This document shows positions 2,683 to 33,472 of a stretch of 33,472 nucleotides of DNA, piece by piece; within the stretch, counting starts at the first letter, position 1; every line of letters begins with the position of its first letter. Origin of the DNA: Octopus bimaculoides. Lineage: Eukaryota. Location: contig NC_068999.1 of NCBI RefSeq assembly GCF_001194135.2, positions 26,115,524-26,148,995 of the forward strand, written 5' to 3'. The notes below the pieces were generated by a model, which had not been told where the DNA came from, did not search any database, and was given only the letters and a program-made list of their open reading frames with translations. Position numbers and translations under genes: made by a program.

Positions 2683-2685
<3 letters not shown>

Positions 2686-4836: not shown

Positions 4837-4854
4837 TGTATATATGCATATGTA

Positions 4855-13064: not shown

Positions 13065-13163
13065 GACTGAGGAGGAAGAGTTTGTCAGCAGAAAAATGTA
13101 TTCAAAACGGAGTAGACAAAACAATCGCAAGAAGAATATCTTAACGACTTTTTACACTCACAG
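13065..13163 (+). CDS. KRI1: KRI1 internal exon
   Basis: TTTTGTAG acceptor, GTAATT donor at 13164. (R)TEEEEFVSRKMYSKRSRQNNRKKNILTTFYTH aligns with the KRI1 SEQEE...AYSQKAQN..KK segment. Phase 2 in, phase 2 out. Confidence 0.85.
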
Positions 13164-13401
13164 GTAATTCCTCAAAAGAGAATTTTATAATGTTAGCTAA
13201 AAATGTGTGTGTGTATGTATAAATAAAACAATTGTTCTAAAATATTTCGATTCATCTAGCTTTACCTCTTGTTTTTTTCACTTTTTTAAACCAGTTCTTA
13301 GAATTTTTGTCAGTTCATAACAGAAAAGTAACTAGATTTTTATGATTTAGTCAAATCTAATTTGAGATTAATTACTTAACTACTGCAATATCTAATTACA
13401 G

Positions 13402-13921
13402 TGAGTCTTCCTCGAGTAAAACATCAAATAATAAAGAAGAAAATGAAGAGAAAGTAGAAAAAAAGCCATGCAACATAAAATCTGACCACAAATCTAATGA
13501 TGAGATTCCTTCAGTAAACAGTAAGCAACAGAAAAACTCTAAGAAGCGAAAGATGTCAGTTGATGATGCCTCACCAGAACAAAACATGGCAAGTGCTGAA
13601 AACGAAGAAAATGCAGTAAATAAATCCAAAAAGAAGTTTCAGTCCAAAGATAACAGTTCGTCAATAGCAGGGGCTTTAACCAAAACCAAAAGTTCAAAAG
13701 GTTCTAAAAATAAAACTGAAAAAGAAGGAAATACTGCAAAGGTTTCTGAATTGTCAAATACCAAACTGAAGAGGAAGAAACGTGCTGAATGCTGGAAGCA
13801 AAAGCAAAAAGGAAACAAACACAATGAACAATTAAATGTAACATTGTCTAATACCCGTCTCAAAGCATATGGCATCAACCCAAAGAAGTTTAAATACATC
13901 CAACTTACAAAACAGAAATAA
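13402..13921 (+). CDS. KRI1: KRI1 terminal coding exon (Lys/Ser/Glu-rich tail)
   Basis: AATTACAG acceptor ends 13401. The frame is open into ORF 13553-13921, which ends in RLKAYGINPKKF, the conserved KRI1 terminal motif (RLxAYGLNPK). Stop TAA at 13919-13921. Confidence 0.88.
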
Positions 13922-13975
13922 AAAAAATTGATAATTCGTTGTAATGGTTTATTGTTTCGTTTTGTTTTCTATATT
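13917..13975 (+). terminator. Candidate KRI1 polyadenylation signal
   Basis: AATAAA overlaps the stop codon (13917-13922) and is followed by a T/GT-rich tract (TTTATTGTTTCGTTTTGTTTT). Not verifiable without transcripts. Confidence 0.4.
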
Positions 13976-14258
13976 TTAGTACTTTCTCCTTTACTGTTTT
14001 TATTGACATCATTACAATCTGTTATATACATAAATAATTACACAGTTATACATACACATACTTCCACAAACTTACATGTATAATATAATTTCCCTTCCTA
14101 ACATTTCACCCAATTCACCATTAAGAGCTACATCAAAATATAAACCCATGCTTGCAACATTCTTTAATTAGTAACAGATCTTCATATTTTCATAAAATTC
14201 ATATAACAATCACTATGACACTTCCCAACTCTCAGAAATGCCTAAACACATTTACCTT

Positions 14259-15110
14259 CATCATCATCGTTTAACGTCTGTTTTCCATGGGTTGGACAGT
14301 TTGACTGAGGTCTAGAAAGCTAGCAGCTGCACCAGGCTCCAATCTGATCTGGCAATGTTTCTATAGCTGGATGCCCTTCCTAACGCCAACCACTCCGAGA
14401 GTGTAGTGGGTGCTTTTTACATGCCACCGGCACAGGAACTAATCAGGCAGGCCTGGCATCGATCACGTTTGGATAATGCTTTTTACGTGCCACCAGCACG
14501 GGAGCCAGTTAGTGGGTACTGGCATCAGCCACGTTCAGATGGTGCTTTTTACATGCCACCGACATAGGAGCCAGCCAGGGGGCACTGGTCACAGCTACGA
14601 TATTGGTTTTACTTGACTCAGCAGGTCTTCTCAAGCATATCATATCATACAGCGCATCAGCGGTACTCTTAACTGGGCCAGACATGCGTGGCTGCGATCT
14701 CACTTTAGTTGCCGGGTCTTCTCAATCACAGCATACCTCCAAAGGTCTCGGTCTCCTGTCATTGCCTCTGGGAGACCCAATGTTCAAAGCTGATGCTGCA
14801 CCACCTCATCTCATGTCTTCCTGGGTCTACCTCTTCCACAGGTTCCTTCCACAGTTAGGGAGTGGCACTTCCTCATTCATACGTAACACATGACCATACC
14901 AGTACAGTCGTCTCTCTTACACACCACATTTGATGTTTCTTATGCCCAACTTTTCTCTCAAGGCGTATGCATACTGACATTACACATCCAGCGGATCATA
15001 CCAGCTTCATTTCTTTCAAGCTTACACAGCAGTCATGGCCGATGTTTTACTGCCGTATAGCATGGCAGTCTGCACACGTACATTGTACACACTACCTTTC
15101 ATCCTGAACA
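14259..15110 (-). mobile_element. 5'-truncated RTE LINE, reverse orientation
   Basis: Begins CATCATCATCGTTTAACGTC (reverse tail), with three reverse TGGCA(C/T)GTAAAA motifs and the RT C-terminus (LREKLGIRNIKCGV on the minus strand). Confidence 0.88.
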
Positions 15111-15364
15111 AGAGGTCCTTAGTTGCCAACATAGGTAGGAGCTACAAAAATGTATGGTCTTTGCCTGATTGAAAGAAAGTTTCCTGTACAGTAGGCCAAG
15201 TAATTTTGTTTCCATGTTATCTGAATGTGGAAGGAAGAGTCGCTGGAGTTGTGAACAAAGGCAGTGGAGACAGAAAGTTATATGACACACACACACTCTC
15301 CCTCTCTCACATGCACTAAACAGTGAACTGAAATTGACAGCCATTATGTATGCAAGATACATTG

Positions 15365-15840
15365 AGAGTCAGTTGAAGGAGAATAGAGCAGTGGAAGAGA
15401 AAGAAGGAAGATATTATAAAGAGAAGTGATTTAAATAGATAGGGAATTATTAATTAGAGTGGGAGAGAAAGAGAGAATTAATCAGCATTCTTGCTAGTGG
15501 ACCAGGTAGGCAGGTGAGAAAACAGGAAGGATGGATAAAAAGAGTGGGAAAGGAAGAGGTGGTTTAAATAATGAAGTAAAAGAGGGAGAGAGAAAACGAT
15601 AAGAAATCTACCATAGAGAGGGAATTGGGTAACACGATAAAAGGAGCAAATAAAGAGAAATTTGTGCATAATATTGAGAAGTGTGGAGGAAAAAACATTG
15701 GGAAATGAAGAAGGGAGGTGGAGAATGATTTGAAAAGTAGAAACTAAGCTTGAATTGTAAAGAAAAAGTAAGCACGAAAAAAAATGGAGACAAGGTTTGA
15801 AGCAGAAAGATTGAGAATTACTGAAAGGAAGCAGAGTTAG
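15365..15840. repeat. Purine-rich (GA/AAG) low-complexity tract
   Basis: Strong A/G strand bias by inspection, similar in character to the PLE 3' tracts at 10060-10210 and 11560-11700. Confidence 0.55.
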
Positions 15841-16151
15841 ACCCTGTCATTTTTTTATAGTATAAAAAAGTAATATCATAAACCTGCCTTCCTCTCTACT
15901 GTAGTGCCACTGAATAGAAGGGAATTTTAGTTTTGTGAGTTACATTGCAACCTCACTAATGCTGGTGCCTCAAAAAAAGGACCCAGTACACTCTGTAAAG
16001 CGGTTGGCATTAGGAAGAGTATTTGGCTACAAAAACTATGCCACAGTAGACATTGAAGCTCAATGCAGTCCTCAGACCTGTCAAACCCTCCCAACTCATA
16101 TCAACAAAGAAGGTGGACTTTGAAAGGTGTTTTTTTTTTTCTTTTTTGCAA

Positions 16152-17760
16152 AGAGATTTCCATCATCATTGTTGTTTAACATCCATCTTCCTTGCATGCA
16201 TGGGTAGGATGGATGACAGGCAGAAAAACTCTCCTAGGCTACTGTGTCTGTTTTGGCAGGGTTTTTATGGCTGGATGCCCCTCTTAACGCCAACCACTCC
16301 ACAGAGTGAACTCAGTGCTTTTTTATGTGGCACTAGCACAGGCGACGTTAGTTTTGGCATGATTTTTACAGCTGGATGCCCTTCCAGATACCAACCACAT
16401 TACAATGTGAACTGGATGCTTTTAACATGGCACCAGCAATGTCAGGGTAACTAAGTAACTTACAAGACAAGGAAATACGAGAGGGGCAAGGCCTTTGAGG
16501 AAGGAGACTTGTATCAGTGGATGAAAGGTTATAGTGTGACAAAGATACAGAAGCAGGTGTCTTGCCACAACAGAGTGGACATTAGAGGAGGTGATCCAGT
16601 ATCAGATGATAAAAGGTTAGAGTATAACAGAGAAATAGAGAGGCAGAAATAGGTGTCTGTCTGTCCTTGTTTGTCCCCTCTATGTTTAGCCCCTTGTGGG
16701 CAATAAAGAAATAAGAAATAGGTGTCTTGCTATAGAGGAGGTACAAGAAAGAGGCCAGAAACAAATGTGCTGATGTAAAGGAGATACTTGGTTACCTAGT
16801 CGGAGGAAAAACAAGAGAATGTGACTAAGAAACAGCAAAGGTTTAGTGCTAGGGTATACTTACAAGTAACAAGAATATGAGCATAGAAGCTGGGTTGAAA
16901 AATTGTGTGTGGGGAGCAGTGATACAGTGAGCAGGGCAGTGAGGGCAAGAAAGGGGACTGGAAAACAATCATAATTTATGAAGAGGAAATGTGAGGAAGA
17001 AAAAGATGCAGTTAGAAGAGGAGCTGTAGTTCGATTTCTTAGGGTAGAGTGGGTGAAAAGCATGTTGTTACATGTGGGTGGGCTACAACTCTTCTAACAC
17101 TCAATTTTGTGGACGAGTCTTCTCTAGAACCTCATATCGCCAAACATCTTGGTCCACTGTCATTTCCTCCATGAGCCCCAACATCCTAAGATCTGTCCTT
17201 ACCACTTCATCCCATGTCTTCCTAGGTTTCCCTCTTCCACAGGTACCATCCACTTCCAGAGACCAGCACTTACTCATATGCATCCCATGTACAAACCAAT
17301 ACATTCTTTCCTGCATACCACATTTAATCCCTCTTATACCCAACTTTTCTCTCAACACTGTTGTGCTTTATTGGTCATGCACTCTGGTGTTGCGAATCCA
17401 ATGAAGCATACTACTTTCGTACCTTTCCAGCATACGCATGTCCTCTGGTCTCCTAAATAGCAGAAACTATCTACTACCTCAAGAGAGCCTCCTGGGTATT
17501 TGAGAGAGTTTCAGTCCCTCATGCTCTTAGTACTTACTGTTCCTGTGCACCTGCAACACACGAAAGTGACCTTATTTGACAACCTTCCCATAATTCCACT
17601 GCACCTCTTATGCGTCCATAGCTTACACTTGGTGCAGCAAATGGAATTACATCCCACTCCTTTCCTACATACTGAACAGGGCTATTTGCCAGCTGGAAGG
17701 AGAGTCTTATCTCCTTTCTTGCTAACAACAAGGGGATAAGAGTTAAAGCCCAATTAATTA
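16152..17760 (-). mobile_element. RTE LINE fragment(s), reverse orientation (tail, purine-biased UTR region, RT C-terminus and PHD-like finger)
   Basis: Reverse tail at 16152-16440. Minus-strand ORFs 17101-17358 (LREKLGIRGIKCGMQER..GRGKPRKTWDEVV) and 17534-17806; WKYPCSVCRKGVGCNSICCTKCKLWTHKRC on the minus strand. Whether this is one copy is uncertain. Confidence 0.78.
16659..16713 (+). mobile_element. 55-bp 5'-truncated insertion of the family 2 SINE 3' end with a 14-bp TSD
   Basis: Near-identical to 2461-2516; perfect TSD AGAAATAGGTGTCT at 16645-16658 and 16714-16727. Confidence 0.85.
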
Positions 17761-17764
17761 GAAA

Positions 17765-19262
17765 CAGAATGAGACCAGATGAAATGCCATTCAGCTTTGT
17801 CCCCATAGTCAGGCAACTTCAAGAGAAGTATTTAGCTAAGAACAAGCTGCTGTACTTGGCATTTGTTGATCTAGAGAAAGCCTTCGGCAGAGTACCTCAC
17901 TCTGTGATATGGTGGTCTCTGAGGAAGTTAGGGATAGAGGAATGGCTTGTGAAAATAATACAGGCTATGTCCAGGGGTGCTGTTAGTAAGGTAAGAGTTG
18001 GCCATGGGTACAGTGATGAATTTAGTGTACAGATAGGTGCACACTAAGGTACCCTCAGTACCCTCTTACCATTGTCCTCCAAATCATAACAGGAATTTAA
18101 GACTGGAAGCCCATGGGAACTACTACATGCTGATTATATAGAAAAATCTATATCATAATTAAGAAATTCCAGGAATGGAAACAGAACTTGGAATCAAAGG
18201 CTCTTAAAGTAAACTTAGCAAAAACCAGGGTCCTAGTAGGGAAGAAATTGGTCAGGACCCTTCACCCTTCTGATAAATGGCTCTGCTTGATATATAGGAA
18301 GGGTGTAGACAGAAATTCCATTTGGTGTACCCAGTGCAAGCTGTGGATGCACAAAAGGTGCAGTGAAATAGTAAGAAGGTTAACAGATAAAGTAGTGTTT
18401 GTATGGGACCATAAAGATGCATAGAAAACTGATTTCCTTAAAATGTTCCAGTGGCTCTCTGGAAATCATAGATAATTTTTGCTCCTTAGCAGTGGAGGAA
18501 GTTGTAGAGAAAATGTAATTGCTAGAATAAGAATAGGATGAAGAAGGTTTAGAGAGCTATTACTTCTGTTGGCAACCAAAAGTCTCTCTTTCTCCAAGAG
18601 AGGATTGTATGATGCATGTGTACAAATTGCAATACTGTATGGCCTTGAATACAGAAGATGTGAAGACTGGAGAGGAACAAAGCTGGTATGCTCCACTGGA
18701 TGTGCATGTACAACAGTGCATTGATATTGAGAAAGAAGTTAGGGACAAGAGGAATTAGACACAGTGTGCAAGAGAGGAGACTGCTGATTTGGTCATGTGA
18801 TGTGGATAGATGAGGACAGTTGCATGAAGTGCTGATCACTTAAAGTGGAGGGAGGTTGTGGAAGAGGGAGACCCAGGAAGACATGGGATGAAGTATTGAG
18901 GGCTGGTCTCAAAACGTTGAACCTTACAAAGATGACAGAAGACCAAGATATGTAGTGCATTGTTTTACTTGAGAAGACCCACCCACCACAACAGAATTGA
19001 GGTACAGAAAATGAAGTGCCATGTAAAAAACATTGGTGTGTCTGCTGGTGTCACATAAAAAACACTAGTGCTGATGCCACTTAAAAGCACTGGTGATAGT
19101 ACTACATAAAAAGCACCCAGTTCACTCTGTGAAGTGGTTGGCATTAGGAAGGGCATCCAGTCATAGAAACCAGGCCAAAACAGGCTATGGAACTTAGTGC
19201 AACCCCTGACTTTGCCAGCCTGGAAAATGGACGTTAAATGTTGATGATAATGATGATGGTGA
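17765..19262 (+). mobile_element. 5'-truncated, degenerate RTE LINE
   Basis: IVRQLQEKYLAKNKLLYLAFVDLEKAFGRVP (RT), LKVNLAKTRV, decayed finger CTQCKLWMHKRC, RGRPRKTWDEV; tail GGACGTTAAATGTTGATGATAATGATGAT. Confidence 0.88.
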
Positions 19263-20573
19263 TATATATACCATACTAACTCCTTTGATAAAGGCATCGC
19301 TATTACTATCCATCGATTTATATGCAGACATTCAAATTAAGCTGATGAAAAATAAACTTTTCCTGCTGCAGGTAAGTAATAGTCTCATTAGCTTAAATTT
19401 GAGTAATGTATAATGAAGTAAACACTTCATCAGATTTCAATTCATGACATGAACGTATAGTATCCTATCCTCTAGATCATTTTGCTTCCATGCAGTTAAA
19501 ATGTATTTTAAATTGGTAAACAGTTGAAATGCAGCTTTCTTCTTGTTTGTCACTGTCTGTGACAGGCTGTGTAATCATTATAATTGGGTCATTATTAACT
19601 TATTGAATAATCTCTGCCTACTTGAACAGCAGAAAGGCACTGTCTTTAATGTTGTAGGAGCATATGATGTCCTGTTTTTAGATTTAAAACATGTGATACC
19701 CACTTTAAAGATAAGAAGTAGGTAGATTATAAAAGGAAATTTGGTAGTTACATGACACCCCTTTTGTCATAAATTTTCACACTAAGATAAGTTGAATAAA
19801 TCTCATTTGTTAGAGGATATTTTTGTGGCCAGTTTGATGTATTGGCTAGTCATTGTAGTGACCATCACCAGAAAGGTTCTGGTCACCAAAAATTCTGTGG
19901 CTTTTATATACTAGTGGCTTTTATACTAGTAGGTCTTAACCTGGGGACGGCATCAGTAATTTTCAAGGGGGTGCATGAGCCCTTGAGAAAAAGCAGGAAT
20001 TTCATTAATTATGTTTGTTGTTCTCTTAATGAGAGAATAGCCAAATAATGAGAAGTTTAAGAAACAATGCAAAAGTATCACCTTTAGTTTTCTTATTCTA
20101 CTATCTTAGCACCGTTTACCATTTTCTGTACTTATTGACCCACCACCACTTCATATCCCTAAAAACCTGCACTAATTCTAAATTGTAACTTTAACATTTG
20201 CTTTTATTTTGTAATTTTTTTTTTGTCACAAGACTGGTATAAAGCTTAGATATTATTATCGTGTAAAGACAAACACCTTTTGCAGTTAATAGATTATAAA
20301 CAAGTTTGATCCACTGTTTTCATATATATGAAATAATGTGATTCTTAAAAATCAAGAGACATACTGAAGCATTATCAAATCATTATAGTAACATACTAAG
20401 AATAGGTTCTACTATCACTCAATTTGATAAAATCTCAAACAAATTAAAACATAGATTGGAAAAATAAAAAATTTTAACAATAAAACCAAATTTTTTTATA
20501 TTAAATCTTTATGTTAAAAACACAGTAAATTTTTTGTAAGAAAAAAATTATAATATAAAGTACTTTATAATAT

Positions 20574-20717
20574 AAAGATTTTGCATAGCTTTTAGTTTTA
20601 CCAAGTACTTTCTGTAATATTTAAATCTGAAATTTAGTTTAACATTTGTTAAACTAAATTTCAGATTTAAATATTACAGAAAGTACTTGGTAAAACTAAA
20701 AGCTATGCAAAATCTTT
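20574..20717. repeat. Perfect palindrome: 71-bp arms, 2-nt loop
   Basis: 20574-20644 is the exact reverse complement of 20647-20717 (checked block by block). Confidence 0.95.
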
Positions 20718-20959
20718 TCCTTTTTAAAGAAATCTTTTTTATATTTTCGTACAAATAAATACAATATTTTATTGTACAAATTTTTCATATAACTTTTCTT
20801 TTAATTTAACTTAATTTTAATTTAACTAATTCCAAATTTTTTTTCAGAACTCTTTACTCCAAGCATTCTAACTTGGGCCTTGACATTATCTTACATGTGC
20901 CTTATCTTCTGTTCACATATTTGTGTTGTCCACTGCACATCAAATAATTCGCAAGGAGT

Positions 20960-22030
20960 GCAAAGAAATGGAAGTATCTTGACAAATATATTCATTCTCT
21001 CCAAAAGGATGACACAGAAGTCCCCCAGTGTATGATATGTTACAAAACTTTGAGCGATGATGGAATGCGACCCTCACACTTGGAATACCATTTAAGGACA
21101 ACATATCCTGCTTTTGCAGACAAGCCCAAGGCATTCTTTGAAACAAAAAGACATTCCTTGAAGCAAGCTAAATTGGATGGTTGTGGGGCATTTCAGCAAC
21201 AAACTTCAATGGTTGTTGAGACTTCCTATGAAATCACCATGTTCATTGCAAAGAGCAAGAAGAGCCATAACATCGGAGAGTCTCTCATAAAACCAAGTCT
21301 ACTCCATGCAGCAGAACTCATTCTGGGGAAAGATAGTGCAAACAAGCTTTCTCAGATTTCACTATCAAACAATACAGTCAAGGAAAAGATCGACGACTTG
21401 TCTCAAGACATCAAAGATCAAATTCTCAACCACATAAGAGATTCTCCTGTTTTTGGATACCTTTGAAGTGTTGAATGCTCTCGACCTTAAACTACAAGGG
21501 CAAAACATCAATATTCTCATGCGTCACGACCCCATTCAAACCTTTATGGCCAAACTCAACCTCTGGAAATGTCTAATTGAGCAGGGAAATACAGCCAGTT
21601 TTAGTTACTTGGATTCTGCTCTCACTCAGGGTAACCTTGGTTCTGAGTTAAAGAAACAAATAATCACTCATCTGACTGACTTGAAAACAGAATTCATCAG
21701 ATACTTCCCAGATACAGATGAAAAGCATGAAGTCTGGAGATTCATCAGGAACCCATTTCTGTGTGAAGTGACTGATATTTTGGATGAAGTGTAAGAGGAG
21801 TTTCTTGAGCTGAAGTTCAACTGGATCTTGAAATGTTCTGGATCAAGTACCTTCCTGTTTACCCTCTGATCTCACATCAGGCTCTTCAGATTTTAGCTAT
21901 TTTTGGATCCATGTATCTTTGTGAAACTGCACCTTGCACACTTGTTGCTGTCAAGAATAAGTACAGAAACAGGATGAACGTTGAAAATACTCCAACATTA
22001 AGAAAATACTGCAACACATGGCATCACTAA
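20960..22030 (+). pseudogene. Buster/Charlie-family hAT transposase relic (ZBED5/ZBED8/FAM200-like), internally deleted
   Basis: PQCMICYKTLSDDGMRPSHLEYHL, SYEITMFIAKSKKSHNIGESLIKP, ISLSNNTVKEKI, NALDLKLQG, FMAKLNLWK, hATC-like FGSMYLCETA...VKNKYRNRMNVE. Three frames; the central catalytic region is missing. A possible decayed left TIR (TAGTAGGTCTTAACCTGGGG) lies at 19927-19946. Confidence 0.85.
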
Positions 22031-22226
22031 TTCTCGGAATTTTCTTGAAAACAAGAAAATACATCAGCTTTATTCTCTCTTTCTACAATAGTAACTGCTC
22101 CCATGAATACTCTAACTATACACCTCAAGCATACACTATTTGATACCATTCTGTTTTCATCTCTGCTGTATTTCAATCCTCCTCAGCCACATGTTTCCCA
22201 CAAAGCAACCTACAAAAGGTCTAGAT

Positions 22227-22732
22227 CAGGGGTGGGGAAATCCCCGCCCACAAAACCATTTTATTTTGCCCACAGGCTGATATACTCGCATGTACAAAAT
22301 ATAGTAAATTTTTCAATTATAAAATTTATACAATATTTGTATGCCTGTTTCCAACATAGGTTGCATTTCCACTACGACTTAAAAGGGTTAGACTCAAACA
22401 GAAACTCATTGGGTAATTGCCATTTGAATGGAAATTTTGTTTTCACTATCACTATAAAACACACATTGCTAGGTTTGTACCACCCCCTTGAGACCCAACT
22501 ACACGCTAGCTGAAAAATATAGAAACCTCATAAGTAATATAAATGTCCTAAATTCAGTGGCTGTGTTAATAAAGATGATACATATTAATTTAATCTGTTA
22601 AACTTATTTTTATTAATGTATATCAAATTATACATAGATATGTACAAGATCTACACAGATATAAGAATTAGAACTTGTGATCCGCCCTTGGACCTTTTTT
22701 TTTCTCTCGTATAGAAAGTTTCCCCACCCCTG
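22227..22732. mobile_element. Non-autonomous hAT (Charlie-type) MITE
   Basis: 14-bp perfect TIR CAGGGGTGGGGAAA / TTTCCCCACCCCTG; 8-bp TSD GTCTAGAT / GTCAAGAT, matching the NTCTAGAN target preference of Charlie/Buster elements. Confidence 0.9.
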
Positions 22733-23190
22733 GTCAAGATAAATACCATGTGTATCAACTTCGTACATTTCTGTAAACCAAACTTCAAGCTCTGAGGATC
22801 TCAATTACTTTAATGGCATATTATGTACATGATTACTTTGTGCAGTATATTCATCCATTTTCAAGATATCGTCAGTTAAAATTTGGAAGAAGATTTAGTA
22901 ATTAATTTTTGTAGGTTGAGCGACCATGTAGAGCAGCACTGCCCCCTTGGGGGCGGTGGATAGATCCAGGAGGGCATTGAAGTAAAGTGGGATGATAATG
23001 GGGTGATGGATGTAAAAAAAAAATATTAATAGGTTAATTAGGTTTAAGTTTTGTTTGTGAAATACAGTTGTTTTGAATTTTCTGCAGAAAATAAGTCTAT
23101 ATATTTACGGGTGAGGGCACTAGGAATGTGGCCTGAGTGCCAAGGTGGCAGCAGCCTGAAAAAGTTTGGAATTACTTTTGTAGAGGTTCT

Positions 23191-23386
23191 GGTAATTTTT
23201 CAGATTAACACATGCACGATTTTCACTAGGGTGTTAGGGTTAGGGTTAGGGTTTTAGGGTTAAGGTTTTAGGGTTAGGGTTAGGGTAAGGGTTTAGGGTT
23301 AGGGTTAGGGTTAGGGTAAGGGTTTAGGGTTAGGGTTAGGGTTTTAGGGTTAGGTAATCGTGCAGGTGTTAATCTGAAAAATTACC
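23191..23386. mobile_element. Merlin-like MITE, family T copy A, with an internal (TTAGGG)n array
   Basis: 31-bp TIRs GGTAATTTTTCAGATTAACAC(A/C)TGCACGATT at 23191-23221 and 23356-23386 (1 mismatch). 8-bp TSD GAGGTTCT / AAGGTTCT (7/8). About 120 bp of TTAGGG and variants inside. GG termini plus an 8-bp TSD fit the Merlin superfamily. Confidence 0.82.
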
Positions 23387-24122
23387 AAGGTTCTTTCATT
23401 TGCTCACAGTTTTAAATCCATTCGTATATAGGGGGAGGCAAGGTTATTTGGAACACAGTTCGCAAAAGTATTTATTTTTGCAACATGCTTATCTCGATAA
23501 ATTTAATATATTTTTATAGCTATATATGTAAACAGTAAATTTATAACTATGTTCCACAAGGACCTAGAGATATTCGCAAAAAAATGTAATTTTTGTGACC
23601 CAGGACATTCATATTTGCATATTTCAGCATGAACTGGTATTGTCCATTTGGGGTATACAAAATCTTTCAACAACAAACAAAAACCGCACAACAGCACACT
23701 TTGAATCATTACAGTTGCACACAGCCCCCTTAAGACATTATAATACTAAAACTAAAAAACCATCTGGGTATGTGAAAAGTTCAATTTGTGGCTGCAGCAA
23801 CTCCAGTCCTTAGTTTCTACAACTACATGGAAAAACAACTTCCAAAACATCAGACACATTTACAAAACCACATATACTTCCACTCAAGTCAAGACAAAAG
23901 CTTACACATAGAAATAGCTGCAACATCCATAACCCCCAAACATAATGTGATGTAAAGTAAAACAAAAATAAAATCTTTCTGGAAAACGTTTTGCTTTACT
24001 CCATCTCCATTTCAAATAATAATCTTAATTCTTTGGACCTATACAACAGCTACTACAAAGACAATAAATGAGAAATGATCCGTGTAGTTACAATTCATTT
24101 ACTATCCAACAAAAATATTCCA

Positions 24123-25808
24123 TCACTTATTTCTCATGTGCTCAATTTTTGCTCTTAAATCGGAGAAAGACTCCTTAAAGTCAGGTTTTTTCTTCAGATT
24201 AACTCGAGACACTTGTTTTCTGCTTTCTCTTTCGCGCTCACTTTGAAGAAGGTAGGTAAAGTTGTTTAACAAGTGTTTGCCATTCCTATTTCGCAGAAAA
24301 CTTTCTTTTACATCAGCTTCAACAGGTTTCCATTCCAAAATGTTTTCAGTGTTGTTCTGTACCAACGGGCGCTTCAATAAAGTAGTTACTTCACTGAATT
24401 TCGTTGCAGTGATCTTTTGTAGCTCAGACCGTTTGTTTGGTTTATCCTCGATTATAAAAGGACCCTTGAGAAACTGAACTGCTTTCTTTTCAAAGTCGTT
24501 TATTGCTTCATTAATTCTTTGTGCAGAGCCATAAAACGACATTACTTTATAATCTGTGAGTCGTCTTTGTAAGCGCTGTGGAAGTGGGAAATGACGCGAA
24601 TGACTCAGTGTTAGACGGTCGTCTGAACAAGTGATTGAAGGAATATCAAATACTTTGCTTCTCAATATGATGTGGTCTTCTTCAAAGAAAATATTAAAAA
24701 AGATGTCCTGTTCACCAATATCCACCGAATTTATCCCCTTCGAATTTCCCAACAATCTAAACGTTTGACTATTGCTGTTTAGCATTGATCCAAGTTTCAA
24801 AAGAGTATCGATCTTGTGACTACTTTGAGAAAGATTTCCCTTAGCTTCATACAAAGTATTTGTGATACTGAAACACGTCCAGCGTAAAAGCATAGATTCG
24901 CTGTCGTTAAGATCATGCTTTCGGGCTACACTTCTACACAATAACATTACTTGACTGTAAATGAAATCCATAAATACTGTCGCAAATATATTTGCCAATA
25001 GTTTCGGTTGTCCTTTTGAATTTACCGAAATCTGTCGCTGACCTGCTAATATTATTTGATTCTTTAAATTTAAAATATCACAGTCTAACGAGGCAGCCGA
25101 AATATCGAAGAGGGAAATAGTTTTGGTTTCAACTTTCATAGAATTTTTGCAAATTAATCTTTTCCGTTGTACTTGCCTTCTTTTCTTCCATACATGTTTT
25201 ATTAACACTAAAGTTGCTGTGGTTATTAACATTGCAATCAAGACAATAACTTTATCAATAATCGTAGGAATGTAATCAATAATATCGTTGTACAGTTGCC
25301 CACCAATAACTGTTTTTGTCCATTTGCCGAATAACAAAAAGGAACGAGATAGAAAATTGACAAACTTTAGAAAAGATTTAAAACTATATCTATAATAAAA
25401 TATCTGTAAGCAGAAGCCAGTCGTTGATGTCTTTAACCAGAGGTTTAATAAGTTTACTCGCTTTTCTAATTTACAAACCTTGCTCAGACAGCAATATAGA
25501 GAACACATAAGAACAAAAATTGTTGCCCAAATAATCGTTTGCTTTAAGCAAGTCTGAATATCTTTTAAAAGATTATCCACATATTCAATATTTTTGCACA
25601 TCTCTCGGCACGGAAATAAAGGAAATTGTGCGAGGCGTGCATTTTCCGAGTCTGGAATTAACGGAACATTGGATTTACGGCATCCGAAAAGAGACAAGAA
25701 TTCCCAATCGCGTAATGTACTCAGTCCGATGAACGGAATTAAGAACTGAACCGATAAAGTTACATCTTGAAGAAAAGAAATCTGAGATTGAAGCTTATTC
25801 CGATCCAT
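24123..25808 (-). CDS. Intronless 561-aa ORF of unknown function, predicted membrane protein
   Basis: Uninterrupted 1686-bp ATG-to-stop ORF in AT-rich DNA where neighbouring TE ORFs are broken. Hydrophobic segments at aa ~91-108 and ~187-203, the latter followed by KHVWKKRRQVQRKR. Visibly more CpG than the flanks. Candidate AATAAA on the minus strand at 23471-23476. I recognise no domain. Confidence 0.7.
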   Translation of the reverse strand: MDRNKLQSQISFLQDVTLSVQFLIPFIGLSTLRDWEFLSLFGCRKSNVPLIPDSENARLAQFPLFPCREMCKNIEYVDNLLKDIQTCLKQTIIWATIFVLMCSLYCCLSKVCKLEKRVNLLNLWLKTSTTGFCLQIFYYRYSFKSFLKFVNFLSRSFLLFGKWTKTVIGGQLYNDIIDYIPTIIDKVIVLIAMLITTATLVLIKHVWKKRRQVQRKRLICKNSMKVETKTISLFDISAASLDCDILNLKNQIILAGQRQISVNSKGQPKLLANIFATVFMDFIYSQVMLLCRSVARKHDLNDSESMLLRWTCFSITNTLYEAKGNLSQSSHKIDTLLKLGSMLNSNSQTFRLLGNSKGINSVDIGEQDIFFNIFFEEDHIILRSKVFDIPSITCSDDRLTLSHSRHFPLPQRLQRRLTDYKVMSFYGSAQRINEAINDFEKKAVQFLKGPFIIEDKPNKRSELQKITATKFSEVTTLLKRPLVQNNTENILEWKPVEADVKESFLRNRNGKHLLNNFTYLLQSERERESRKQVSRVNLKKKPDFKESFSDLRAKIEHMRNK

Positions 25809-26103
25809 TGTACTAAAACCCTTAATATTATAAATATTAAAGGTGAATAGTTAGAAAACTTCAAGGATTCGGATAAGAATATAATTAGCTTTTTGTTAGC
25901 GATTATCCTTTTGACTACTGTGAAAAATTTTGAAAAACGATAGCTCTATTTTAAAATCATTTTAGCGTTCAGTGTCGATCAACTCCTTTTCATGCATTCA
26001 GGTTCTTCGGGAGAGTTCATTTTCCATGTATTTTATTAACACTTTTCTTTTTCGGAATTTTTTTTTTTTTTATGCCGGCTTGTAATGTCTTTCCCAAGAT
26101 TTT

Positions 26104-26284
26104 GGTAAATTTTCAGATTAACACCCGCACGATTTTCACTAGGGTGTTAGGGTTAGGGTTACGGTTAGGGTTAGGGTTAGGGACGGAATTCCCTAACCCT
26201 AACCGTAACCCTAAACCCTAACCCTAAAACACTAACCCTAACACCCCAGTGAAAGTCGTGCGGGTGTTAATCTGAAAATTTACC
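26104..26284. mobile_element. Merlin-like MITE, family T copy B: fold-back with head-to-head (TTAGGG)n-(CCCTAA)n arrays
   Basis: About 50-bp TIRs GGTAAATTTTCAGATTAACACCCGCACGA(T/C)TTTCACT(A/G)GGGTGTTAGGGTTAG; G-strand array, 8-bp spacer ACGGAATT (26183-26190), C-strand array. Perfect 8-bp TSD AAGATTTT at 26096-26103 and 26285-26292. Confidence 0.88.
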
Positions 26285-26414
26285 AAGATTTTTCCCCGAC
26301 TGAATTTCAATATTGCTTTGTTTAGTTCAGAATTAGTTTGACTTTTTTCAATGAGATAACAAGATCGAAATAAATCATTTATTTATTTATGTAACATATT
26401 CTTTTATTTGTTTC

Positions 26415-27990: not shown

Positions 27991-28149
27991 AAACTTCTGG
28001 TTACGGCGTCTCGGTGATGAGCCATTAAACGTACAGCTCTGGGTACTGAATTAAATAATCTACTTCTGACAAAAAAACAAGCTCAAGGGGACAAAAATTC
28101 CAGCAAAGGTAAAGAATATACACATCAGGTGTTTAGGGTTAGGGTTACG

Positions 28150-31100
28150 CTGAAAATGGATGGTGTGTGTATCCTTTACCGCTGCCAAAATTCCGATCCA
28201 AACCAGTGGTACCCAGTGTAAAATCCTACCTAAATGGACCTAATAGCGTAATGGGCACAGATTCGTCGAAAGGCACAATGAGTGATTTGAAGTCAGCAGA
28301 TGCCATGTTGATCTCAAATGATATCAAAGAATTCATTAAATCACAAACGGTGGAAATTCTCAACTCATTTGCCTCTGTAAAAGCCGAGTTGGAACAACTG
28401 AACGAACATTCAACCAAAATGGAACGAACCATTGATTTTAATTCTGGAAAAATTGCGGAAATGAGATGGGAAATCAACAACATGGCGGAAACACAAAGTA
28501 AGTTTGATGATAAATTCATAGAGTTTGAACTTTACTCTTGCAGATCAAACATCCTCTTCGATGGAATGAAACATATCGACAATAATGCATCTTTGAGCCA
28601 ACTCGAACATTTTGCCAAGGAACTGTTTATTTCTGTTCTTACAATTGAGGAGAACAAAGTGAAAGCGATATTGCTTGCAAATGTGCATCATCTTCCTCAA
28701 AGAAAAACAGAGCTGGGTAAGCCATAGTCAAGTTTGTCAGTGTAACTGATCAAAATTTAGTCTTTTTTACTGCTCATAAATCCTTCAAAGTTCCATCAGA
28801 GAGGAAAATTAGAATTCACAGTGACCTCCCACAAGTTCTGAAACAGTTTAGAGCCAAACTGGTACATCAAGGCTGATACCTCAGAAATACCAGCAACTTA
28901 CAGGGAAAATTCAGCAAATCTGTGAATATTGATACACACCTTTCGTTGGAAAGAATGACTAACAACACTTGATACAAAACTAAGCTTTGAGCTCATAAGT
29001 TGACTTTTCTTATATTTTGTTGCTCTTTTGAATAAGGTCAGACTTTCATTTTAATTTGTTGATTATGACTGATATGATTTTATTAGTATTCTGTAATAAT
29101 TGTATAACTAAACTCAGTTGCTATGTTTCATGAAGGGGTTGGGTAAAATGTTTGCTAAGAGTGGGTGTATGAATGGAAGGTACGAATGTCAGTTCCTGTG
29201 TGTGTTTGAATATATATCTTTTACTGGAAGGCTTGAGGATTCATTCCAATACTTTTTTCACCATTCATTATGTTTCTTATTACAAATCTGTTATGTATAT
29301 TCTAAACGGATGAGCTAAAATATACCTAAATGTTCAGTCAACTGTAGGGACCTTAATGAAGAAAGGATGTTTTGAATTTTTTGAGGGCCAAAAAATATAA
29401 AATCTATTTATTCCAAGATAACCTCTTTTTGAAAGAAAAAGAACCTTTTATTAGAAGTGAATGGGGCTCTGAGGTACTATTTAATAGTAATAATGGACAG
29501 TCAAGAGGAGTTGCCATTCTGTTTTCTAATAATATTGATTATAAGGTACCTGACAGTTTCAGGGATGGCAAGGGCAATCTTCTGATGTTGAATATCACTA
29601 TTTGTGAGAAAAAAAATATCTTTGGTCAACTTATGTGGCTCAAATGCAGATGAACTGGAGTTTTATGCTGTGGTGATGGATAAAACCAAAGCCTTTGGAA
29701 ACTTGCTTTGTATTATAGCTGGGGATTTTAACCTTTGTCTACAGCAGTCTTTGGATACTTTCATTTATCAACATATAAGCAACCCTAATGCTAGAAAGCA
29801 AGTGATTGATATGATAGGGGACCTCGACCTTGTAGATGTTTGGAGAGATCATAACCCAGAAGTACAGGGATATACATGGAGATGTCCAAATCCTATTAGA
29901 CAAGCAAAGCTAGATTTCTTTCTGGTGTCACAGAATTTATATTCATTTATTTGCCAGTCATCTATAAATCTTGGGTACAGATCAGACTATTCTCTTGTTG
30001 ACATCAAAATAAAACTTCCTAAGAAAGATGACCATAAAAGTACATATTGGAAATTTAATAACTCCCTTTTAAGAAATCCAAAATATGTTTCCTGTTAGGA
30101 AAACCATTAGCAGTGTTGTCAAGCAATATGCCCCCTCTTTGGAACATGATAGAGATATTAGCACAGTTAATTTGTCTGAGATTGAATTTGTTGTAAATGA
30201 TTAATTATTTTTGGAAACTCTTCTAATGGAAATTAGAGGAAAATCTATTTCATATTCTTCATTTAAAAAAAAAAATCTAGATTAAAAAATGAACAGGATC
30301 TATTGGATGATATTAAGCAATTGGAAACCAATTTTTTTTTGTAATCAAGAAATTGGAGGGAAAAAGAATTAGAGGAGATTTGTAAAGTAAAAATGGAGGG
30401 TATTATTATTTGCTCAAGGGCCATGTGGATAGATGAAGGAGAGAAAGTTAGCCGTTGCTTTTGCAATCTAGAAAATATGAATTTTGTGAGTAAAGGCATG
30501 TCCCAATTAGAGCTAGATGATGTGTCTACTGTAGAAAGTACAAATGATATTGTTCTTGAAGCAACATCCTTTTATGAAGGAATGTATTCTTCCAAGGAGC
30601 ATGTGTTGAAAGATTGTGACCTTGATGAACTTTTTTCTGAAGGGGATTTGTATAGGCTTAGTAAGGGAGATTCTGATTCATTGGAAGGCCCAGTAACTCA
30701 TGATGAACTTTTGAAATGTTTGAAAAAGGCAAAGAACAATAAAAGTCCAGGTCCAGATGGGTTTACTTATGAGTTCTATAAATTCTTTTGGAAAGATTTA
30801 TCTCCGTTCCTGTTGAGATCATTCAATTATACCTTTGCTAATGATTATTTGTCAGTGACACAGAGGCAAGGTATCATTATTTGCATTCCAAAAAAAGATA
30901 AGCCCAAACAACTGGAGACCTATAAACTTCTATAGAACTGGAGACCTATAAACTTCTTTCATCTGTTATTGCTGAGAGGTTCAAAAGTATTCTCCCAAAG
31001 CTGGTTAGTACTGATCAAACAGGATTCATATCTAACAGATACATTGGCGATAACATAAGACTAGTATATGATTTGATGAATTACACAGAATCCAATGATA

Positions 31101-32654
31101 TACCAAGAATGTTGTTTTTAATAGATTTTGAGAAGGCATTTGATTTTGCCTCATAGTCATTTATAAACAATGCATTATTATTTTTTGGCTTTGGTGAGGA
31201 CATCTGAAGTGGTTCAATATTCTTTACCACTTACAGATGCTAGATCTTGTTTGAGTATTAATGGTACATTGTCTCCTTAGTTTCCTGTTGAGCAGAGCTG
31301 TAGACAGGGTGATCCTCTCTCTCCCTATATTTTCATCCTCTGCGTCGAGGTCCTGGCTGGTCTTATAAGAAAGAACAGTGATGTTAAAGGAATTACAGTT
31401 GATGGCAAATTTCTTCGGAATTAAACAAAATGGTATTTAAATTACTCTGGAGTGGAAAATCTGATAAGATCAAGAGAGTTGTTGCTTGTATGCCTGTTAA
31501 AGAGGGTAGACTTGGTATGGTAAAAGCTTCTGCTTATGTCAGTTCTTTACAGTTATCTTGGATGAGAAAGTTATTGGATACTAATTATGAATCCAAATGG
31601 AAACATTTGTGCTATGCCTCCTCCCCAAAATGGCTAAGTTTAGCTGTATTTGGTAATGTTTTTCTGAATAAACTCTCCAAGAGTATGATTTTTGGCATGA
31701 TTGTTTTTCTGCTTTTGATAAGTTTACAAATAAGACAGAGCCTAGTTCATTTGATGAATTCATAACAGAACCAATCTATTATAATAAGCACTTAAAAGTT
31801 GATAAAGAGGTAATCTTTTGTTCTGCGTGCTTTGAGAGAGGTGTTAGATTCATGATTTCATCAACTTAGATGGATCCCTTGAAGAATTCCAGAGTACTAT
31901 TGAACTTGATATCAATTTTCTTCATTATAATGGTCTTATCATGACTATTAAAAGCTACCAAGCAAGGTTAAAGACAAGCAAACCTACTTCTTTTCAACAA
32001 TTAGATGATCTAAATTGCAATGGTTTCAGTTCAGAATTATACATAGTATTTTAACAACCAATTTTCTTCTATTTAAGATCAAATTAGCTGAAAGCAACTT
32101 GTGCACTTTTTGTCAATGTGAAGTTGAGACAATAGCACACCTCTTTTGGTATTGTAAACATGTACAAGCTTTTTGGCAACACTTTCTTAAACTGCTGTAT
32201 GGAAAATGCTTGCATGTTCACAACATGAACTTTGTCCTACAGCTTATTGTGTTTGGGTTGAGAAAGAATATATATACTGATGGTGTTTTTGATTTACTAT
32301 TATTGTTAGCTAAATTTTTTATATATAAACGTAAAGTATTAAAAACTACTCTTAGCTTTAAACATTTTAGACATTTTGTACATGATAGGTATCTTATTGA
32401 GAAGAACATATCCTTTAGTAAAAGCGAGCAAGATAAATTTTATAAAAAGTGGATGCTCTACCATGATTTTGCAAATGTTAACTACTCCTTTTCAGGTTGC
32501 TATTTTTTACCTCTTCATAATCATATTACTAGTTTTAACTATGTGGAACCCCAAGAACTTATAGTAATTTTCTGAAAATTTTAGGAGCAATTGGTGAGTG
32601 AATGTGTTGTAGTGTGTAGTCCTGTCTTTTTCTTTTTTTTCCAAAAAAAAAAAG
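28150..32654 (+). mobile_element. Degenerate L1/Tx1-clade LINE (ORF1 ~28170-28900, ORF2 ~29310-32575, poly-A 32643-32654)
   Basis: ORF1: coiled-coil-like region then ELYSCRSNILFDGM. ORF2: SVNCR, QSRGVAILF, IAGDFN, YTW...QAKLDFFLVS, SDYSLV, WKFNNSLL (APE); KSPGPDGFTYEFYKFFW, IDFEKAFD, CRQGDPLSPYIF (RT); CTFCQCEVETIAHLFWYC (C-terminal Zn knuckle). Many stops; the YADD region is deleted near 31410. The 5' boundary is approximate. Confidence 0.88.
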
Positions 32655-32759: not shown

Positions 32760-33238
32760 AAAAATCTTCTGAGAGGGAAACAGGGACAGGATAGGATGTG
32801 TTGGCATACTTTTAGCTGAGAAATGGGTGAATAAGGTGATTGAAGTTGTCAGAATACGTGATAGGGTACTTAAGCTTAGACTAGTTTTGCAGAATAACAC
32901 AACAACAATCATCTCCACCTATACCCACCCAATTGGGTCTACCAAATGAACAAAAGGACTGCTTTTATGACACACTTTTGCAGGCCACTTTGAAGATAAA
33001 TGATAGTGACTTTATCTTTGTGACTGGTGATTTCAAAGAACATGTTGGTCAGCACCCAAGTGTCTTTCATGGGTGCATGGGGGCCATGGAATTGGTTCCT
33101 GAAAGGAGGAGGGAACAAGGTTGCTGGAGTTCTATGATGCAAATGACCTAATGATCTACAACACCAACTTCAGAAAGCCAGCCAGTCACCTTGTAATCTA
33201 TAAATTCGGTGACCACACGAGCCAGATTGACTACATTC
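32760..33238 (+). mobile_element. RTE LINE endonuclease fragment
   Basis: GNRDRIGCVGILLAEKWVNKVIEVVRIRDRVLKL, GLPNEQKDCFYDTL, FVTGDFKEHVG, SQIDYI. Confidence 0.8.
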
Positions 33239-33472
33239 ATCATCATCATCATCATCGTTTAACGTCCGCTTTCCATGCTAGCATGGGTTGGACGATTTGA
33301 CTGAGGACTGGTGAAACCGGATGGCAACACCAGGCTCCAGTCTAATTTGGCAGAGTTTCTACAGCTGGATGCCCTTCCTAACACCAACCACTCAGAGAGT
33401 GTAGTGGGTGCTTTTACGTGTCACCCGCACGAAAACGGCCACGCTCGAAATGGTGTCTTTTATGTGCCACCC
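33239..33472 (-). mobile_element. Young RTE LINE 3' tail, reverse orientation, running off the window
   Basis: (CAT)n CGTTTAACGTCCGCTTTCCATGCTAGCATGGGTTGGACG with CpGs intact. Confidence 0.88.

What the first reader, a model, noticed from the sequence alone, without database searches (positions are those of the whole stretch)
26096..26292. Cut-and-paste element carrying a head-to-head telomere junction (TIR-(TTAGGG)n-8 bp-(CCCTAA)n-TIR)
Seen: a 181-bp near-complete fold-back with GGT...ACC ends, a perfect 8-bp TSD (AAGATTTT) and two inward-pointing arrays of the telomere repeat separated by ACGGAATT. Both arrays share the TTACGG variant. Established: GG termini with 8-9 bp TSDs characterise Merlin (IS1016-related) transposons, and (TTAGGG)n(CCCTAA)n is the geometry of an end-to-end telomere fusion. 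Inference: this is a mobile interstitial telomere cassette. A break at the centre would leave a correctly oriented telomere seed on each arm. It could also recruit TTAGGG-binding proteins and form G-quadruplexes or a cruciform wherever it lands. Telomere-like repeats occur in some other non-autonomous DNA elements, so family novelty needs a library search.
Basis: partly seen in the sequence, partly recalled or inferred. Interest (0 to 1): 0.82.

Follow-up and report, generated by a model that had tools for sequence, protein, structure and literature searches.

The report
Octopus MITE carrying telomere-type repeats
This is a small non-coding "cut-and-paste" transposon in an octopus genome whose interior is a short run of the animal's own telomere repeat. 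It shows that interstitial telomere repeats can be spread by transposition, and it is otherwise an ordinary kind of mobile element.

Summary
Window 26104-26284 is a 181-bp fold-back: TIR, (TTAGGG)6, ACGGAATT, (CCCTAA)~8, TIR, flanked by a perfect 8-bp duplication, AAGATTTT.

The genome is an octopus, probably O. bimaculoides. The orthologous O. vulgaris locus is collinear and has a clean empty site with one copy of the 8-mer. So this is an insertion, not a chromosome-fusion scar.

A second copy lies at 23191-23386. It has the same TIR and an 8-bp duplication, and its site is also empty in O. vulgaris. Its interior is a one-directional array of about 19 TTAGGG units. The head-to-head geometry is therefore not a fixed family trait.

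A 3.1-kb relative in O. sinensis has a 26/30-identical TIR, an 8-bp duplication and 1.4-kb fold-back arms. It carries no telomere repeats.

Best reading: a MITE family with a hitchhiking telomere-type microsatellite. In copy A one arm was mirrored onto the other, because both arms share the TTACGG variant in register.

Merlin is the most likely superfamily. The ends start with GG, all three duplications are 8 bp, and the targets follow the same purine/pyrimidine pattern as octopus Merlins. No transposase-bearing partner was found.

The telomere-seed or healing idea remains untested. I rate this a new member of a known kind, of moderate interest.

The parts
26096..26103 (.). Copy A, left target-site duplication AAGATTTT
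   Evidence: Identical to 26285-26292. The O. vulgaris ortholog L001 has this 8-mer once, an empty site.
26104..26146 (+). Copy A, left terminal inverted repeat (43 nt of unique sequence, starts 5'-GG)
   Evidence: The first 36 nt are 26/30 to 32/36 identical to the ends of the O. sinensis element L005:161-3272.
26147..26182 (+). Copy A, G-strand array: TTAGGG x2, TTACGG, TTAGGG x3, with the 3' end pointing to the centre
26183..26190 (.). Copy A, centre ACGGAATT. The symmetry axis lies in AATT (GGGAATTCCC in the register of the right arm).
26191..26241 (+). Copy A, C-strand array (about 8 degenerate CCCTAA units). CCGTAA mirrors TTACGG at the same register from the centre.
   Evidence: (I2: 27 nt, 96% complementary).
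26242..26284 (-). Copy A, right terminal inverted repeat (2 mismatches to the left TIR)
   Evidence: (I1: 65-nt arms, 92%).
26285..26292 (.). Copy A, right target-site duplication AAGATTTT
23183..23190 (.). Copy B, left target-site duplication GAGGTTCT. It matches the single copy in O. vulgaris.
23191..23233 (+). Copy B, left TIR (3 differences from copy A: T6, A22, T23)
23234..23354 (+). Copy B, one-directional degenerate (TTAGGG)~19 array with TTTTAGGG, TTTAGGG and TAAGGG variants and a 31-bp higher-order period
   Evidence: (period 31, 3.5 copies, 91%).
23355..23386 (-). Copy B, right TIR. Only the outer 30 nt are kept; the inner TTTTCACTAGGGTG part and any C-strand arm are absent.
23387..23394 (.). 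Copy B, right target-site duplication AAGGTTCT (7/8; one later substitution)

Best explanation

The family has no coding capacity. A DDE transposase supplied in trans most likely moves it, by binding the ~30-43-bp terminal inverted repeats that start 5'-GG. The transposase would cut the element out and re-insert it at a staggered 8-bp cut, giving the 8-bp duplication. The most likely source is a Merlin (IS1595-like) transposon, a superfamily unusually abundant in octopus.

The interior is a hitchhiking, degenerate microsatellite of the host telomere hexamer. It is inherited with the element and changes by slippage or unequal exchange.

In copy A the whole left arm (TIR plus array) has been mirrored onto the other side, a fold-back or snap-back duplication around an AATT centre. 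That step automatically turns (TTAGGG)n into (TTAGGG)n-(CCCTAA)n. The telomere-fusion geometry is therefore a consequence of palindromic MITE architecture, not of a chromosome fusion.

Shown here:
- The two window copies are insertions with 8-bp TSDs, and with the related O. sinensis element (8-bp TSD) they form one TIR family.
- The arrays share variants.
- The arms are mirror copies.

Inferred:
- The identity of the transposase.
- The fold-back step.
- The origin of the array. One attractive possibility is telomerase extension of a broken element end just inside the TIR, followed by fold-back.
- Any effect on the host.
For: 1. Insertion. Window 23388-26103 and 26279-26406 align to O. vulgaris L001 12195-9471 and 9484-9357 at about 93% identity, with only the 8-mer in between. 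Copy B is likewise replaced by a single AGAACCTC.
2. Family. Four TIRs occur in the window against 0 expected. A 3112-bp O. sinensis element (L005:161-3272) has TIRs 26/30 identical, a perfect 8-bp TSD AAAAAAAT, arms 1-1437 and 1688-3112 inverted at 94.8% identity, and no transposase.
3. Arrays travel with the element. TTTTAGGG and TTTAGGG variants are shared by A-right and B. Both arms of A carry TTACGG two units from the innermost paired repeat. B shows a 31-bp higher-order period, which points to slippage rather than telomerase synthesis.
4. Merlin-type features. Published Merlin hallmarks are 5'-GG TIRs of 24-462 bp and 8-9-bp TSDs (PMC8101967). O. bimaculoides has 191 Merlin transposase hits. 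An 8.7-kb octopus Merlin defined here has GG ends, ~354-bp TIRs and perfect 8-bp TSDs in 3 of 3 copies.
5. Target pattern. The TSDs of MITE copies A and B and of all three Merlins are purine-rich then pyrimidine-rich. Background frequency is 9.3%, so 5 of 6 gives p ~ 4e-5.
6. TTAGGG is the cephalopod telomere motif (PMC13218726).
Against: - Only two telomere-bearing copies were seen, both in this window. No further copy turned up in about 63 kb of other O. bimaculoides DNA or about 168 kb of O. vulgaris and O. sinensis DNA, so copy number and the commonest form are unknown.
- No transposase-bearing element with these TIRs was found among the octopus Merlin loci inspected.
- Similarity between the MITE TIR and the one well-defined octopus Merlin TIR is weak (7 of the first 12 nt) and not significant.
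- The direction of change is unresolved: either the fold-back is ancestral and copy B is a deletion, or the reverse.
- Repbase and Dfam could not be consulted.
Confidence: 0.8

Rival explanations
1. The element is a relic of an end-to-end telomere fusion, or another chromosome rearrangement that left a head-to-head interstitial telomere site.
For: The (TTAGGG)n-(CCCTAA)n orientation is the geometry of a telomere-telomere fusion.
Against: - The arrays sit inside 43-nt inverted repeats and an 8-bp duplication.
- The flanks are contiguous and collinear in O. vulgaris, with a clean empty site.
- A second copy with the same ends has a one-directional array.
- The arrays are only 36 and 51 bp long and are mirror images, down to the TTACGG variant.
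Confidence: 0.01
2. Each array was added independently at this site by telomerase during double-strand-break repair (the short-ITS mechanism), and the inverted repeats are coincidental.
For: Telomerase-mediated capture of TTAGGG at breaks is an established origin of short ITS in vertebrates (from my own knowledge; not checked here). The array starts exactly where homology to the O. sinensis relative ends, after ...TTTTCACTA.
Against: - The same 30-43-nt ends flank both copies, each with an 8-bp TSD.
- The arrays are degenerate and share variant units between copies.
- Copy B has a 31-bp higher-order repeat.
- Telomerase repair may still explain how the ancestral element first acquired the array.
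Confidence: 0.03
3. It is a MITE as described, but it is mobilised by a non-Merlin transposase: hAT, Mutator/Foldback, P/Galileo or another family that makes 8-bp TSDs.
For: - No Merlin with these TIRs was found.
- hAT and Mutator families outnumber Merlin families in O. vulgaris: 134 and 55 against 18.
- The O. sinensis relative has long arms with ~130-bp subterminal tandem repeats, reminiscent of Foldback or Galileo elements.
Against: - The ends start with GG, not the hAT YARNG or the P/Galileo CA.
- The three TSDs do not follow the hAT nTnnnnAn pattern.
- All three TSDs are 8 bp, whereas Mutator/Foldback typically give 9-10 bp. The hAT, P and Mutator criteria are from my own knowledge.
- The TSD purine/pyrimidine pattern matches the octopus Merlins.
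Confidence: 0.2
4. The element is a mobile telomere-seed cassette: breakage at its centre yields two correctly oriented seeds that telomerase can heal, or it recruits telomere-binding proteins and forms G4 or cruciform structures with consequences for chromosome stability.
For: - The orientation is geometrically right for seeding on both sides.
- Each strand offers at least four GGG runs.
- The hairpin is very stable.
Against: - The arrays are short (6-8 degenerate units).
- Only one of two copies has the two-sided arrangement.
- A relative with the same ends lacks telomere repeats entirely.
- Octopod karyotypes appear stable, 2n=60 in the three species studied (PMC5646656 abstract).
- No data on breakage exist.
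Confidence: 0.05
5. The palindrome is an assembly or sequencing artefact, such as a fold-back chimera.
For: Perfect palindromes can be created by library artefacts.
Against: - The arms differ: 2 substitutions in the TIR and unequal arrays.
- The element is embedded in collinear sequence with a TSD that matches an empty site in another species.
- A second, non-palindromic copy exists.
Confidence: 0.01

Closest known systems
Merlin superfamily DNA transposons and their MITEs (IS1016/IS1595-related; Feschotte 2004; PMC8101967)
   Same: The ends start 5'-GG, the TSD is 8 bp and the TIR length falls within 24-462 bp. The superfamily is abundant in octopus. The targets show the same purine-then-pyrimidine pattern as an octopus Merlin characterised here.
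   Different: No DDE_Tnp_IS1595 transposase with matching TIRs was found. The TIR sequence is only weakly similar to the one octopus Merlin whose ends could be defined. The interior is made of telomere-type hexamers.
MITEs with hitchhiking microsatellites, e.g. the lepidopteran (GTCY)n MITEs (Coates et al. 2011, cited in PMC6947457) and microsatellite- or tandem-repeat-bearing MITEs of bivalves
   Same: A short TIR element whose interior is essentially a microsatellite. The array is spread by transposition and varies by slippage.
   Different: Here the microsatellite is the host's telomere repeat. In one subfamily it is present on both arms in inverted orientation.
Fold-back type elements (Drosophila Foldback, Galileo) and palindromic MITEs
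   Same: Near-complete self-complementarity. The O. sinensis relative has 1.4-kb arms with subterminal tandem repeats.
   Different: The TSD is 8 bp rather than 9 bp (FB) or 7 bp (Galileo). The ends start with GG. Copy A is only 181 bp.
Telomere-bearing elements of ciliates (Oxytricha TBE, PMC4724952; Tetrahymena Tel-1)
   Same: DNA transposons that carry the host telomere repeat in inverted orientation on both sides.
   Different: In TBE the telomere repeats are the outermost tips of a Tc1/mariner element that encodes its own transposase. Here they are internal, point inward, sit in a non-coding element, and occur in an animal.
Head-to-head interstitial telomere sites from chromosome fusion (e.g. 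human 2q13) and short ITS inserted by telomerase at breaks
   Same: The same (TTAGGG)n(CCCTAA)n orientation, with short degenerate arrays.
   Different: This one is flanked by TIRs and a TSD and is absent from a collinear ortholog. It is an insertion, not a fusion point or a repair patch.

Membership tests
MITE (non-autonomous TIR DNA transposon) | Short element with terminal inverted repeats and no coding capacity | tested here: met
   The two copies are 181 and 196 bp with 30-43-nt TIRs. Every reading frame is interrupted or consists of low-complexity repeat.
MITE (non-autonomous TIR DNA transposon) | Target-site duplication of fixed length, confirmed by an empty site | tested here: met
   Copy A has an 8/8 TSD and copy B a 7/8 TSD. 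Both sites are empty, with a single 8-mer, in O. vulgaris. The O. sinensis relative has an 8/8 TSD.
MITE (non-autonomous TIR DNA transposon) | Multiple dispersed copies forming a family | tested here: inconclusive
   Two copies of two TIR subtypes plus one relative in another species were found. There were no further copies in about 235 kb of other octopus DNA, and the whole genome could not be searched.
Merlin superfamily | TIRs begin with 5'-GG | tested here: met
   All four TIRs in the window and both ends of L005:161-3272 begin GGTAA. Criterion from PMC8101967.
Merlin superfamily | TSD of 8 or 9 bp | tested here: met
   The TSD is 8 bp in 3 of 3 elements. Octopus Merlin copies also give 8 bp in 3 of 3.
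Merlin superfamily | TIR length 24-462 bp | tested here: met
   TIRs are 30-43 nt of unique sequence, and the whole arm in copy A.
Merlin superfamily | An autonomous relative with the same TIRs encoding a DDE_Tnp_IS1595 transposase | tested here: inconclusive
   Loci of seven octopus Merlin proteins (10 loci) and one remnant in L001 were inspected, and none has these TIRs. O. bimaculoides has about 191 Merlin hits, so most were not examined.
hAT superfamily | 8-bp TSD with nTnnnnAn preference and short TIRs starting YARNG | tested here: not met
   The TSD length fits. However, the ends are GGTAAA, and none of the TSDs AAGATTTT, GAGGTTCT or AAAAAAAT fits nTnnnnAn in either orientation. The criterion is from my own knowledge.
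Mutator / Foldback | TSD usually 9-10 bp | tested here: not met
   All three TSDs are exactly 8 bp. The criterion is from my own knowledge.
Telomere-fusion ITS | The junction marks a breakpoint of synteny, with no TIR or TSD | tested here: not met
   The flanks are collinear with O. vulgaris on both sides, and TIRs and a TSD are present.

The most novel reading that the evidence does not exclude
The family arose when a broken or half-excised transposon end was extended by telomerase just inside its TIR. The array starts exactly where homology to the telomere-free relative ends, and its G-strand 3' end points away from the TIR. The end then folded back to regenerate a two-ended, transposition-competent palindrome.

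Since then the family has seeded correctly oriented telomere-repeat pairs around the genome. These could act as preferred healing or fission sites and as binding sites for telomere proteins.
Probability: 0.08. Interest if true: 0.75.

Novelty: new member of a known kind. Interest (0 to 1): 0.35.

Why it matters
- Interstitial telomere repeats are routinely read as scars of chromosome fusions. A recent slug genome paper does so for a mollusc (PMC12506671).
- Here two such sites in an octopus are demonstrably transposon cargo, inserted after the split from O. vulgaris. Counts and maps of ITS in cephalopods and other molluscs therefore cannot be taken as a record of rearrangements without masking this family.
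- The motif is also used to guide scaffolding of cephalopod assemblies.
- The element is a compact example of how a palindromic MITE can be built from one arm.
- If the family is abundant, it would be a natural set of dispersed, oriented telomere-repeat pairs for studying fragility, G-quadruplex or cruciform formation, and telomere-protein binding.

Tried and rejected
1. I translated the TIR-plus-array reading frame and searched the 5.8-billion-protein set, hoping to catch ORFs called across other copies. The (LG)n low-complexity part swamped the candidate list, and 0 of 120 hits contain the TIR peptide. The exhaustive representative search with the window ORF also gave only low-complexity hits.
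2. Exact-pattern scans for the TIR found nothing: JGI metagenome contigs (two patterns), IMG/VR viral contigs and GTDB genomes all gave 0 hits. These collections do not hold octopus genomes.
3. I hunted for the autonomous partner. A Merlin profile built from octopus and snail sequences published in the supplement of PMC8101967, plus a translated Merlin remnant ORF from locus L001, recovered octopus Merlin proteins. I fetched 10 loci of 21 kb each.
   - One Merlin family could be delimited: 8.7 kb, GG ends, 8-bp TSDs.
   - None has the MITE's TIR.
   - One look-up returned nothing.
4. Looking up window TE ORFs, to harvest more DNA of the same species, failed. None is on record.
5. Rfam gave no hit anywhere in the window, so there is no support for a known hairpin RNA.
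7. Literature searches for a telomere-repeat MITE found no precedent in the held library.
8. Readings considered and rejected: fusion scar, site-specific telomerase repair, and assembly artefact (see the rival explanations).

Full report
**Observation.**
- Window 26104-26284 is a 181-bp near-palindrome.
- It consists of a 43-nt left TIR (GGTAAATTTTCAGATTAACACCCGCACGATTTTCACTAGGGTG), a G-strand array (TTAGGG x2, TTACGG, TTAGGG x3), the 8-nt centre ACGGAATT, a C-strand array of about eight degenerate CCCTAA units that includes CCGTAA, and the right TIR with 2 mismatches.
- It is flanked by AAGATTTT on both sides (26096-26103 and 26285-26292).
- As single-stranded DNA it folds at -79.8 kcal/mol, against -22.1 +/- 3.1 for shuffles (z = -18.5).
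- The TIR occurs four times in the window, against none in 100 shuffles.

**Organism and orthologous locus.**
- The 561-aa ORF next to the element (24123-25808, minus strand) is 92% identical to a hypothetical protein of Octopus vulgaris.
- The exact window protein is on record only in UniRef and MetaClust. A SINE-like repeat at 33232-33472 is 98.8% identical to a copy in O. bimaculoides, but at most 91% identical to copies in the O. vulgaris and O. sinensis loci I held. The window is therefore probably O. bimaculoides. This is an inference.
- The O. vulgaris locus (L001) is collinear with window 9507-26406 at about 88-94% identity.

**It is an insertion.**
- In O. vulgaris the two flanks of copy A abut, with a single AAAATCTT (the reverse complement of AAGATTTT) and nothing between them.
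- This is a clean empty site. It proves the 8-bp duplication was made by insertion.
- It also excludes a chromosome-fusion scar, because the flanks are contiguous in the sister species.

**A second copy changes the picture.**
- At 23191-23386 there is a 196-bp element with the same ends, 1-3 differences per 29-nt TIR.
- Its flanks are GAGGTTCT and AAGGTTCT. O. vulgaris has one AGAACCTC at an otherwise empty site. This is again an 8-bp TSD, with one later substitution.
- Its interior is a one-directional, degenerate array of about 19 TTAGGG units with a 31-bp higher-order period. Its right TIR keeps only the outer 30 nt.
- The family thus carries telomere-type repeats in both copies seen, but the head-to-head arrangement is present in only one.

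**The arrays are inherited cargo**.
- The variants TTTTAGGG and TTTAGGG occur in both the right arm of copy A and in copy B.
- Both arms of copy A carry the TTACGG variant two units from the innermost paired repeat. The symmetry axis falls in AATT (GGGAATTCCC).
- The two arms of A are therefore mirror copies of one array made in one event. They are not two independent telomere additions.
- The higher-order periodicity of B indicates growth by slippage or unequal exchange.

**TIR subtypes.**
- Both ends of A have A6 and C22-C23. Both ends of B have T6 and T23.
- The two copies thus belong to two subtypes. Within each element the two ends share the diagnostic bases.
- This is what repeated regeneration of one arm from the other would give. 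This is an inference from two copies.

**A relative without telomere repeats.**
- While inspecting octopus Merlin loci I found, by chance, a 3112-bp element in O. sinensis (L005:161-3272).
- Its ends, GGTAAAATTACAGATTATCACCCCCACGATTTTCACTAAG, are 26/30 identical to the MITE TIR, and it has a perfect 8-bp TSD, AAAAAAAT.
- It is a fold-back: arms 1-1437 and 1688-3112 are inverted at 94.8% identity. It has ~130-bp subterminal tandem repeats, no transposase and no TTAGGG array.
- Homology to the MITE stops right after ...TTTTCACTA, exactly where the telomere-type array begins.
- The TIR lineage therefore tends to form fold-back derivatives. In that architecture, any array on one arm automatically appears inverted on the other.
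- A's TIR shares the A6/C22/C23 states with this relative. This mildly favours the palindromic form as the older one, with B as a deletion derivative, but that is unresolved.

**Superfamily.**
- Published hallmarks of Merlin are TIRs of 24-462 bp beginning 5'-GG and TSDs of 8-9 bp (PMC8101967). O. bimaculoides is singled out there for 191 Merlin transposase hits.
- I built a profile from octopus and snail Merlin proteins published in that paper's supplement plus a translated Merlin remnant ORF from locus L001. With it I recovered octopus Merlin proteins and fetched their loci.
- One family could be delimited. It is 8.7 kb with ~354-bp TIRs and termini GGCGATGTTTCG... and GGCATAGTTTCGG.... Its three copies have perfect 8-bp TSDs: GCAAATCT, CAAGGCTT and GAAACTTT.
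- The MITE meets the same criteria. In addition, the TSDs of MITE copies A and B and of all three Merlins are purine-rich in the first half and pyrimidine-rich in the second. Background frequency is 9.3%, so 5 of 6 gives p ~ 4e-5.
- hAT and Mutator/Foldback criteria are not met: the hAT end sequence and nTnnnnAn target, and the Mutator/Foldback 9-10-bp TSDs.
- None of the Merlin loci examined carries the MITE's TIR. Membership therefore remains probable, at about 0.6, rather than shown.

**Abundance.**
- No further copy, and no array of three or more TTAGGG units, was present in about 235 kb of other octopus DNA. About 63 kb of that was O. bimaculoides.
- The two copies in this window therefore overstate the genome-wide density. 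The true copy number is unknown.
- A 22-nt patch at 28127-28148 (GGTGTTTAGGGTTAGGGTTACG) matches the TIR/array junction of copy A, including the TTACG variant. It may be a fragment.

**Mechanism and consequences.**
- Best-supported model: trans-mobilised cut-and-paste insertion with an 8-bp stagger, a hitchhiking telomere-type microsatellite, and fold-back duplication of one arm giving the head-to-head arrangement.
- The geometry would indeed leave correctly oriented repeats on both sides of a central break, and each strand has enough GGG runs for a quadruplex. Nothing here tests that.
- Against the functional reading: the arrays are short and degenerate, one copy is one-sided, and octopod karyotypes appear stable.
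- A speculative origin is telomerase extension of a broken element end followed by fold-back. It fits the array orientation and start point, but rests on little evidence.

**Comparison with known systems and novelty.**
- MITEs that spread microsatellites are known (Coates et al. 2011, via PMC6947457). So are fold-back and palindromic MITEs, and ciliate transposons tipped with telomere repeats (TBE, PMC4724952).
- Searches of the held literature found no MITE with a telomere-repeat interior, and no mention in the 2026 O. vulgaris repeat annotation. Repbase and Dfam could not be queried.

**Verdict.** I rate it a new member of a known kind, of moderate interest. Its main value is as direct evidence that interstitial telomere repeats in a mollusc genome can be transposon cargo rather than fusion scars (compare).

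Noticed in passing
window 24123-25808 (minus strand); L001 10001-11476 and L001 1-2275: An intron-less 561-aa ORF with no Pfam domain is conserved at 92% aa identity in O. vulgaris, where a second, tandem paralog lies about 8 kb away. The two MITE copies bracket it: copy A is 295 bp upstream of the ATG and copy B is 736 bp downstream of the stop.
   Followed up: partly
L005 161-3272 (O. sinensis CM016860.1): A 3.1-kb fold-back element with the same TIR lineage as the MITE. It has a perfect 8-bp TSD, 1.4-kb inverted arms and ~130-bp subterminal tandem repeats. It has no ORF of note and no telomere repeats.
   Followed up: yes
L005 4266-12986; L007 4253-12988; L006 3888-12938: An 8.7-kb Merlin element with ~354-bp TIRs and perfect 8-bp TSDs at three different sites. 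It encodes an identical 305-aa transposase in O. sinensis (two chromosomes) and O. vulgaris, which looks recently active.
   Followed up: partly
L001 7750-8557 (O. vulgaris): A degraded Merlin transposase remnant lies about 1 kb from the empty site of copy A. The corresponding stretch is not present in the window.
   Followed up: partly
window 28127-28148: GGTGTTTAGGGTTAGGGTTACG is a 22-nt match to the TIR/array junction of copy A, including the TTACG variant. It has no recognisable TIRs and sits just upstream of a LINE ORF. It may be a fragment or footprint of the same family, or chance.
   Followed up: partly
L012 12553-12675; L012 3075-3086 and L013 15187-15198 (O. sinensis): Other short octopus repeats contain two-unit telomere-like motifs. 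One is a small palindrome with CCCTAACCCTAA ... TTAGGGTTAGGG pointing outward. Another repeat family contains TTAGGGTTAGGGG.
   Followed up: no
L009 10001-10891 (O. bimaculoides) and L013 10001-10891 (O. sinensis): Merlin-derived 296-aa genes of equal length have the same HTH_48-domain neighbour downstream in both species. This looks like an old shared insertion, possibly domesticated.
   Followed up: no
window 28167-32575; 4321-6262; 7558-7905; 17769-18047; 21032-21794: The window is dense with decayed transposons: a frameshifted LINE with endonuclease and RT remnants, ORFs that read like Tc1/mariner and hAT fragments (judged from the translations; no Pfam hit), and an RT fragment at 17769-18047 (weak Pfam hit) plus an RT-like one at 7558-7905 (by eye).
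   Followed up: partly
window 14411-14588 and 2630-2682: A 66-bp tandem repeat (2.7 copies) lies within the region collinear with the O. vulgaris Kri1 gene. There is also an (AT)26 microsatellite.
   Followed up: no
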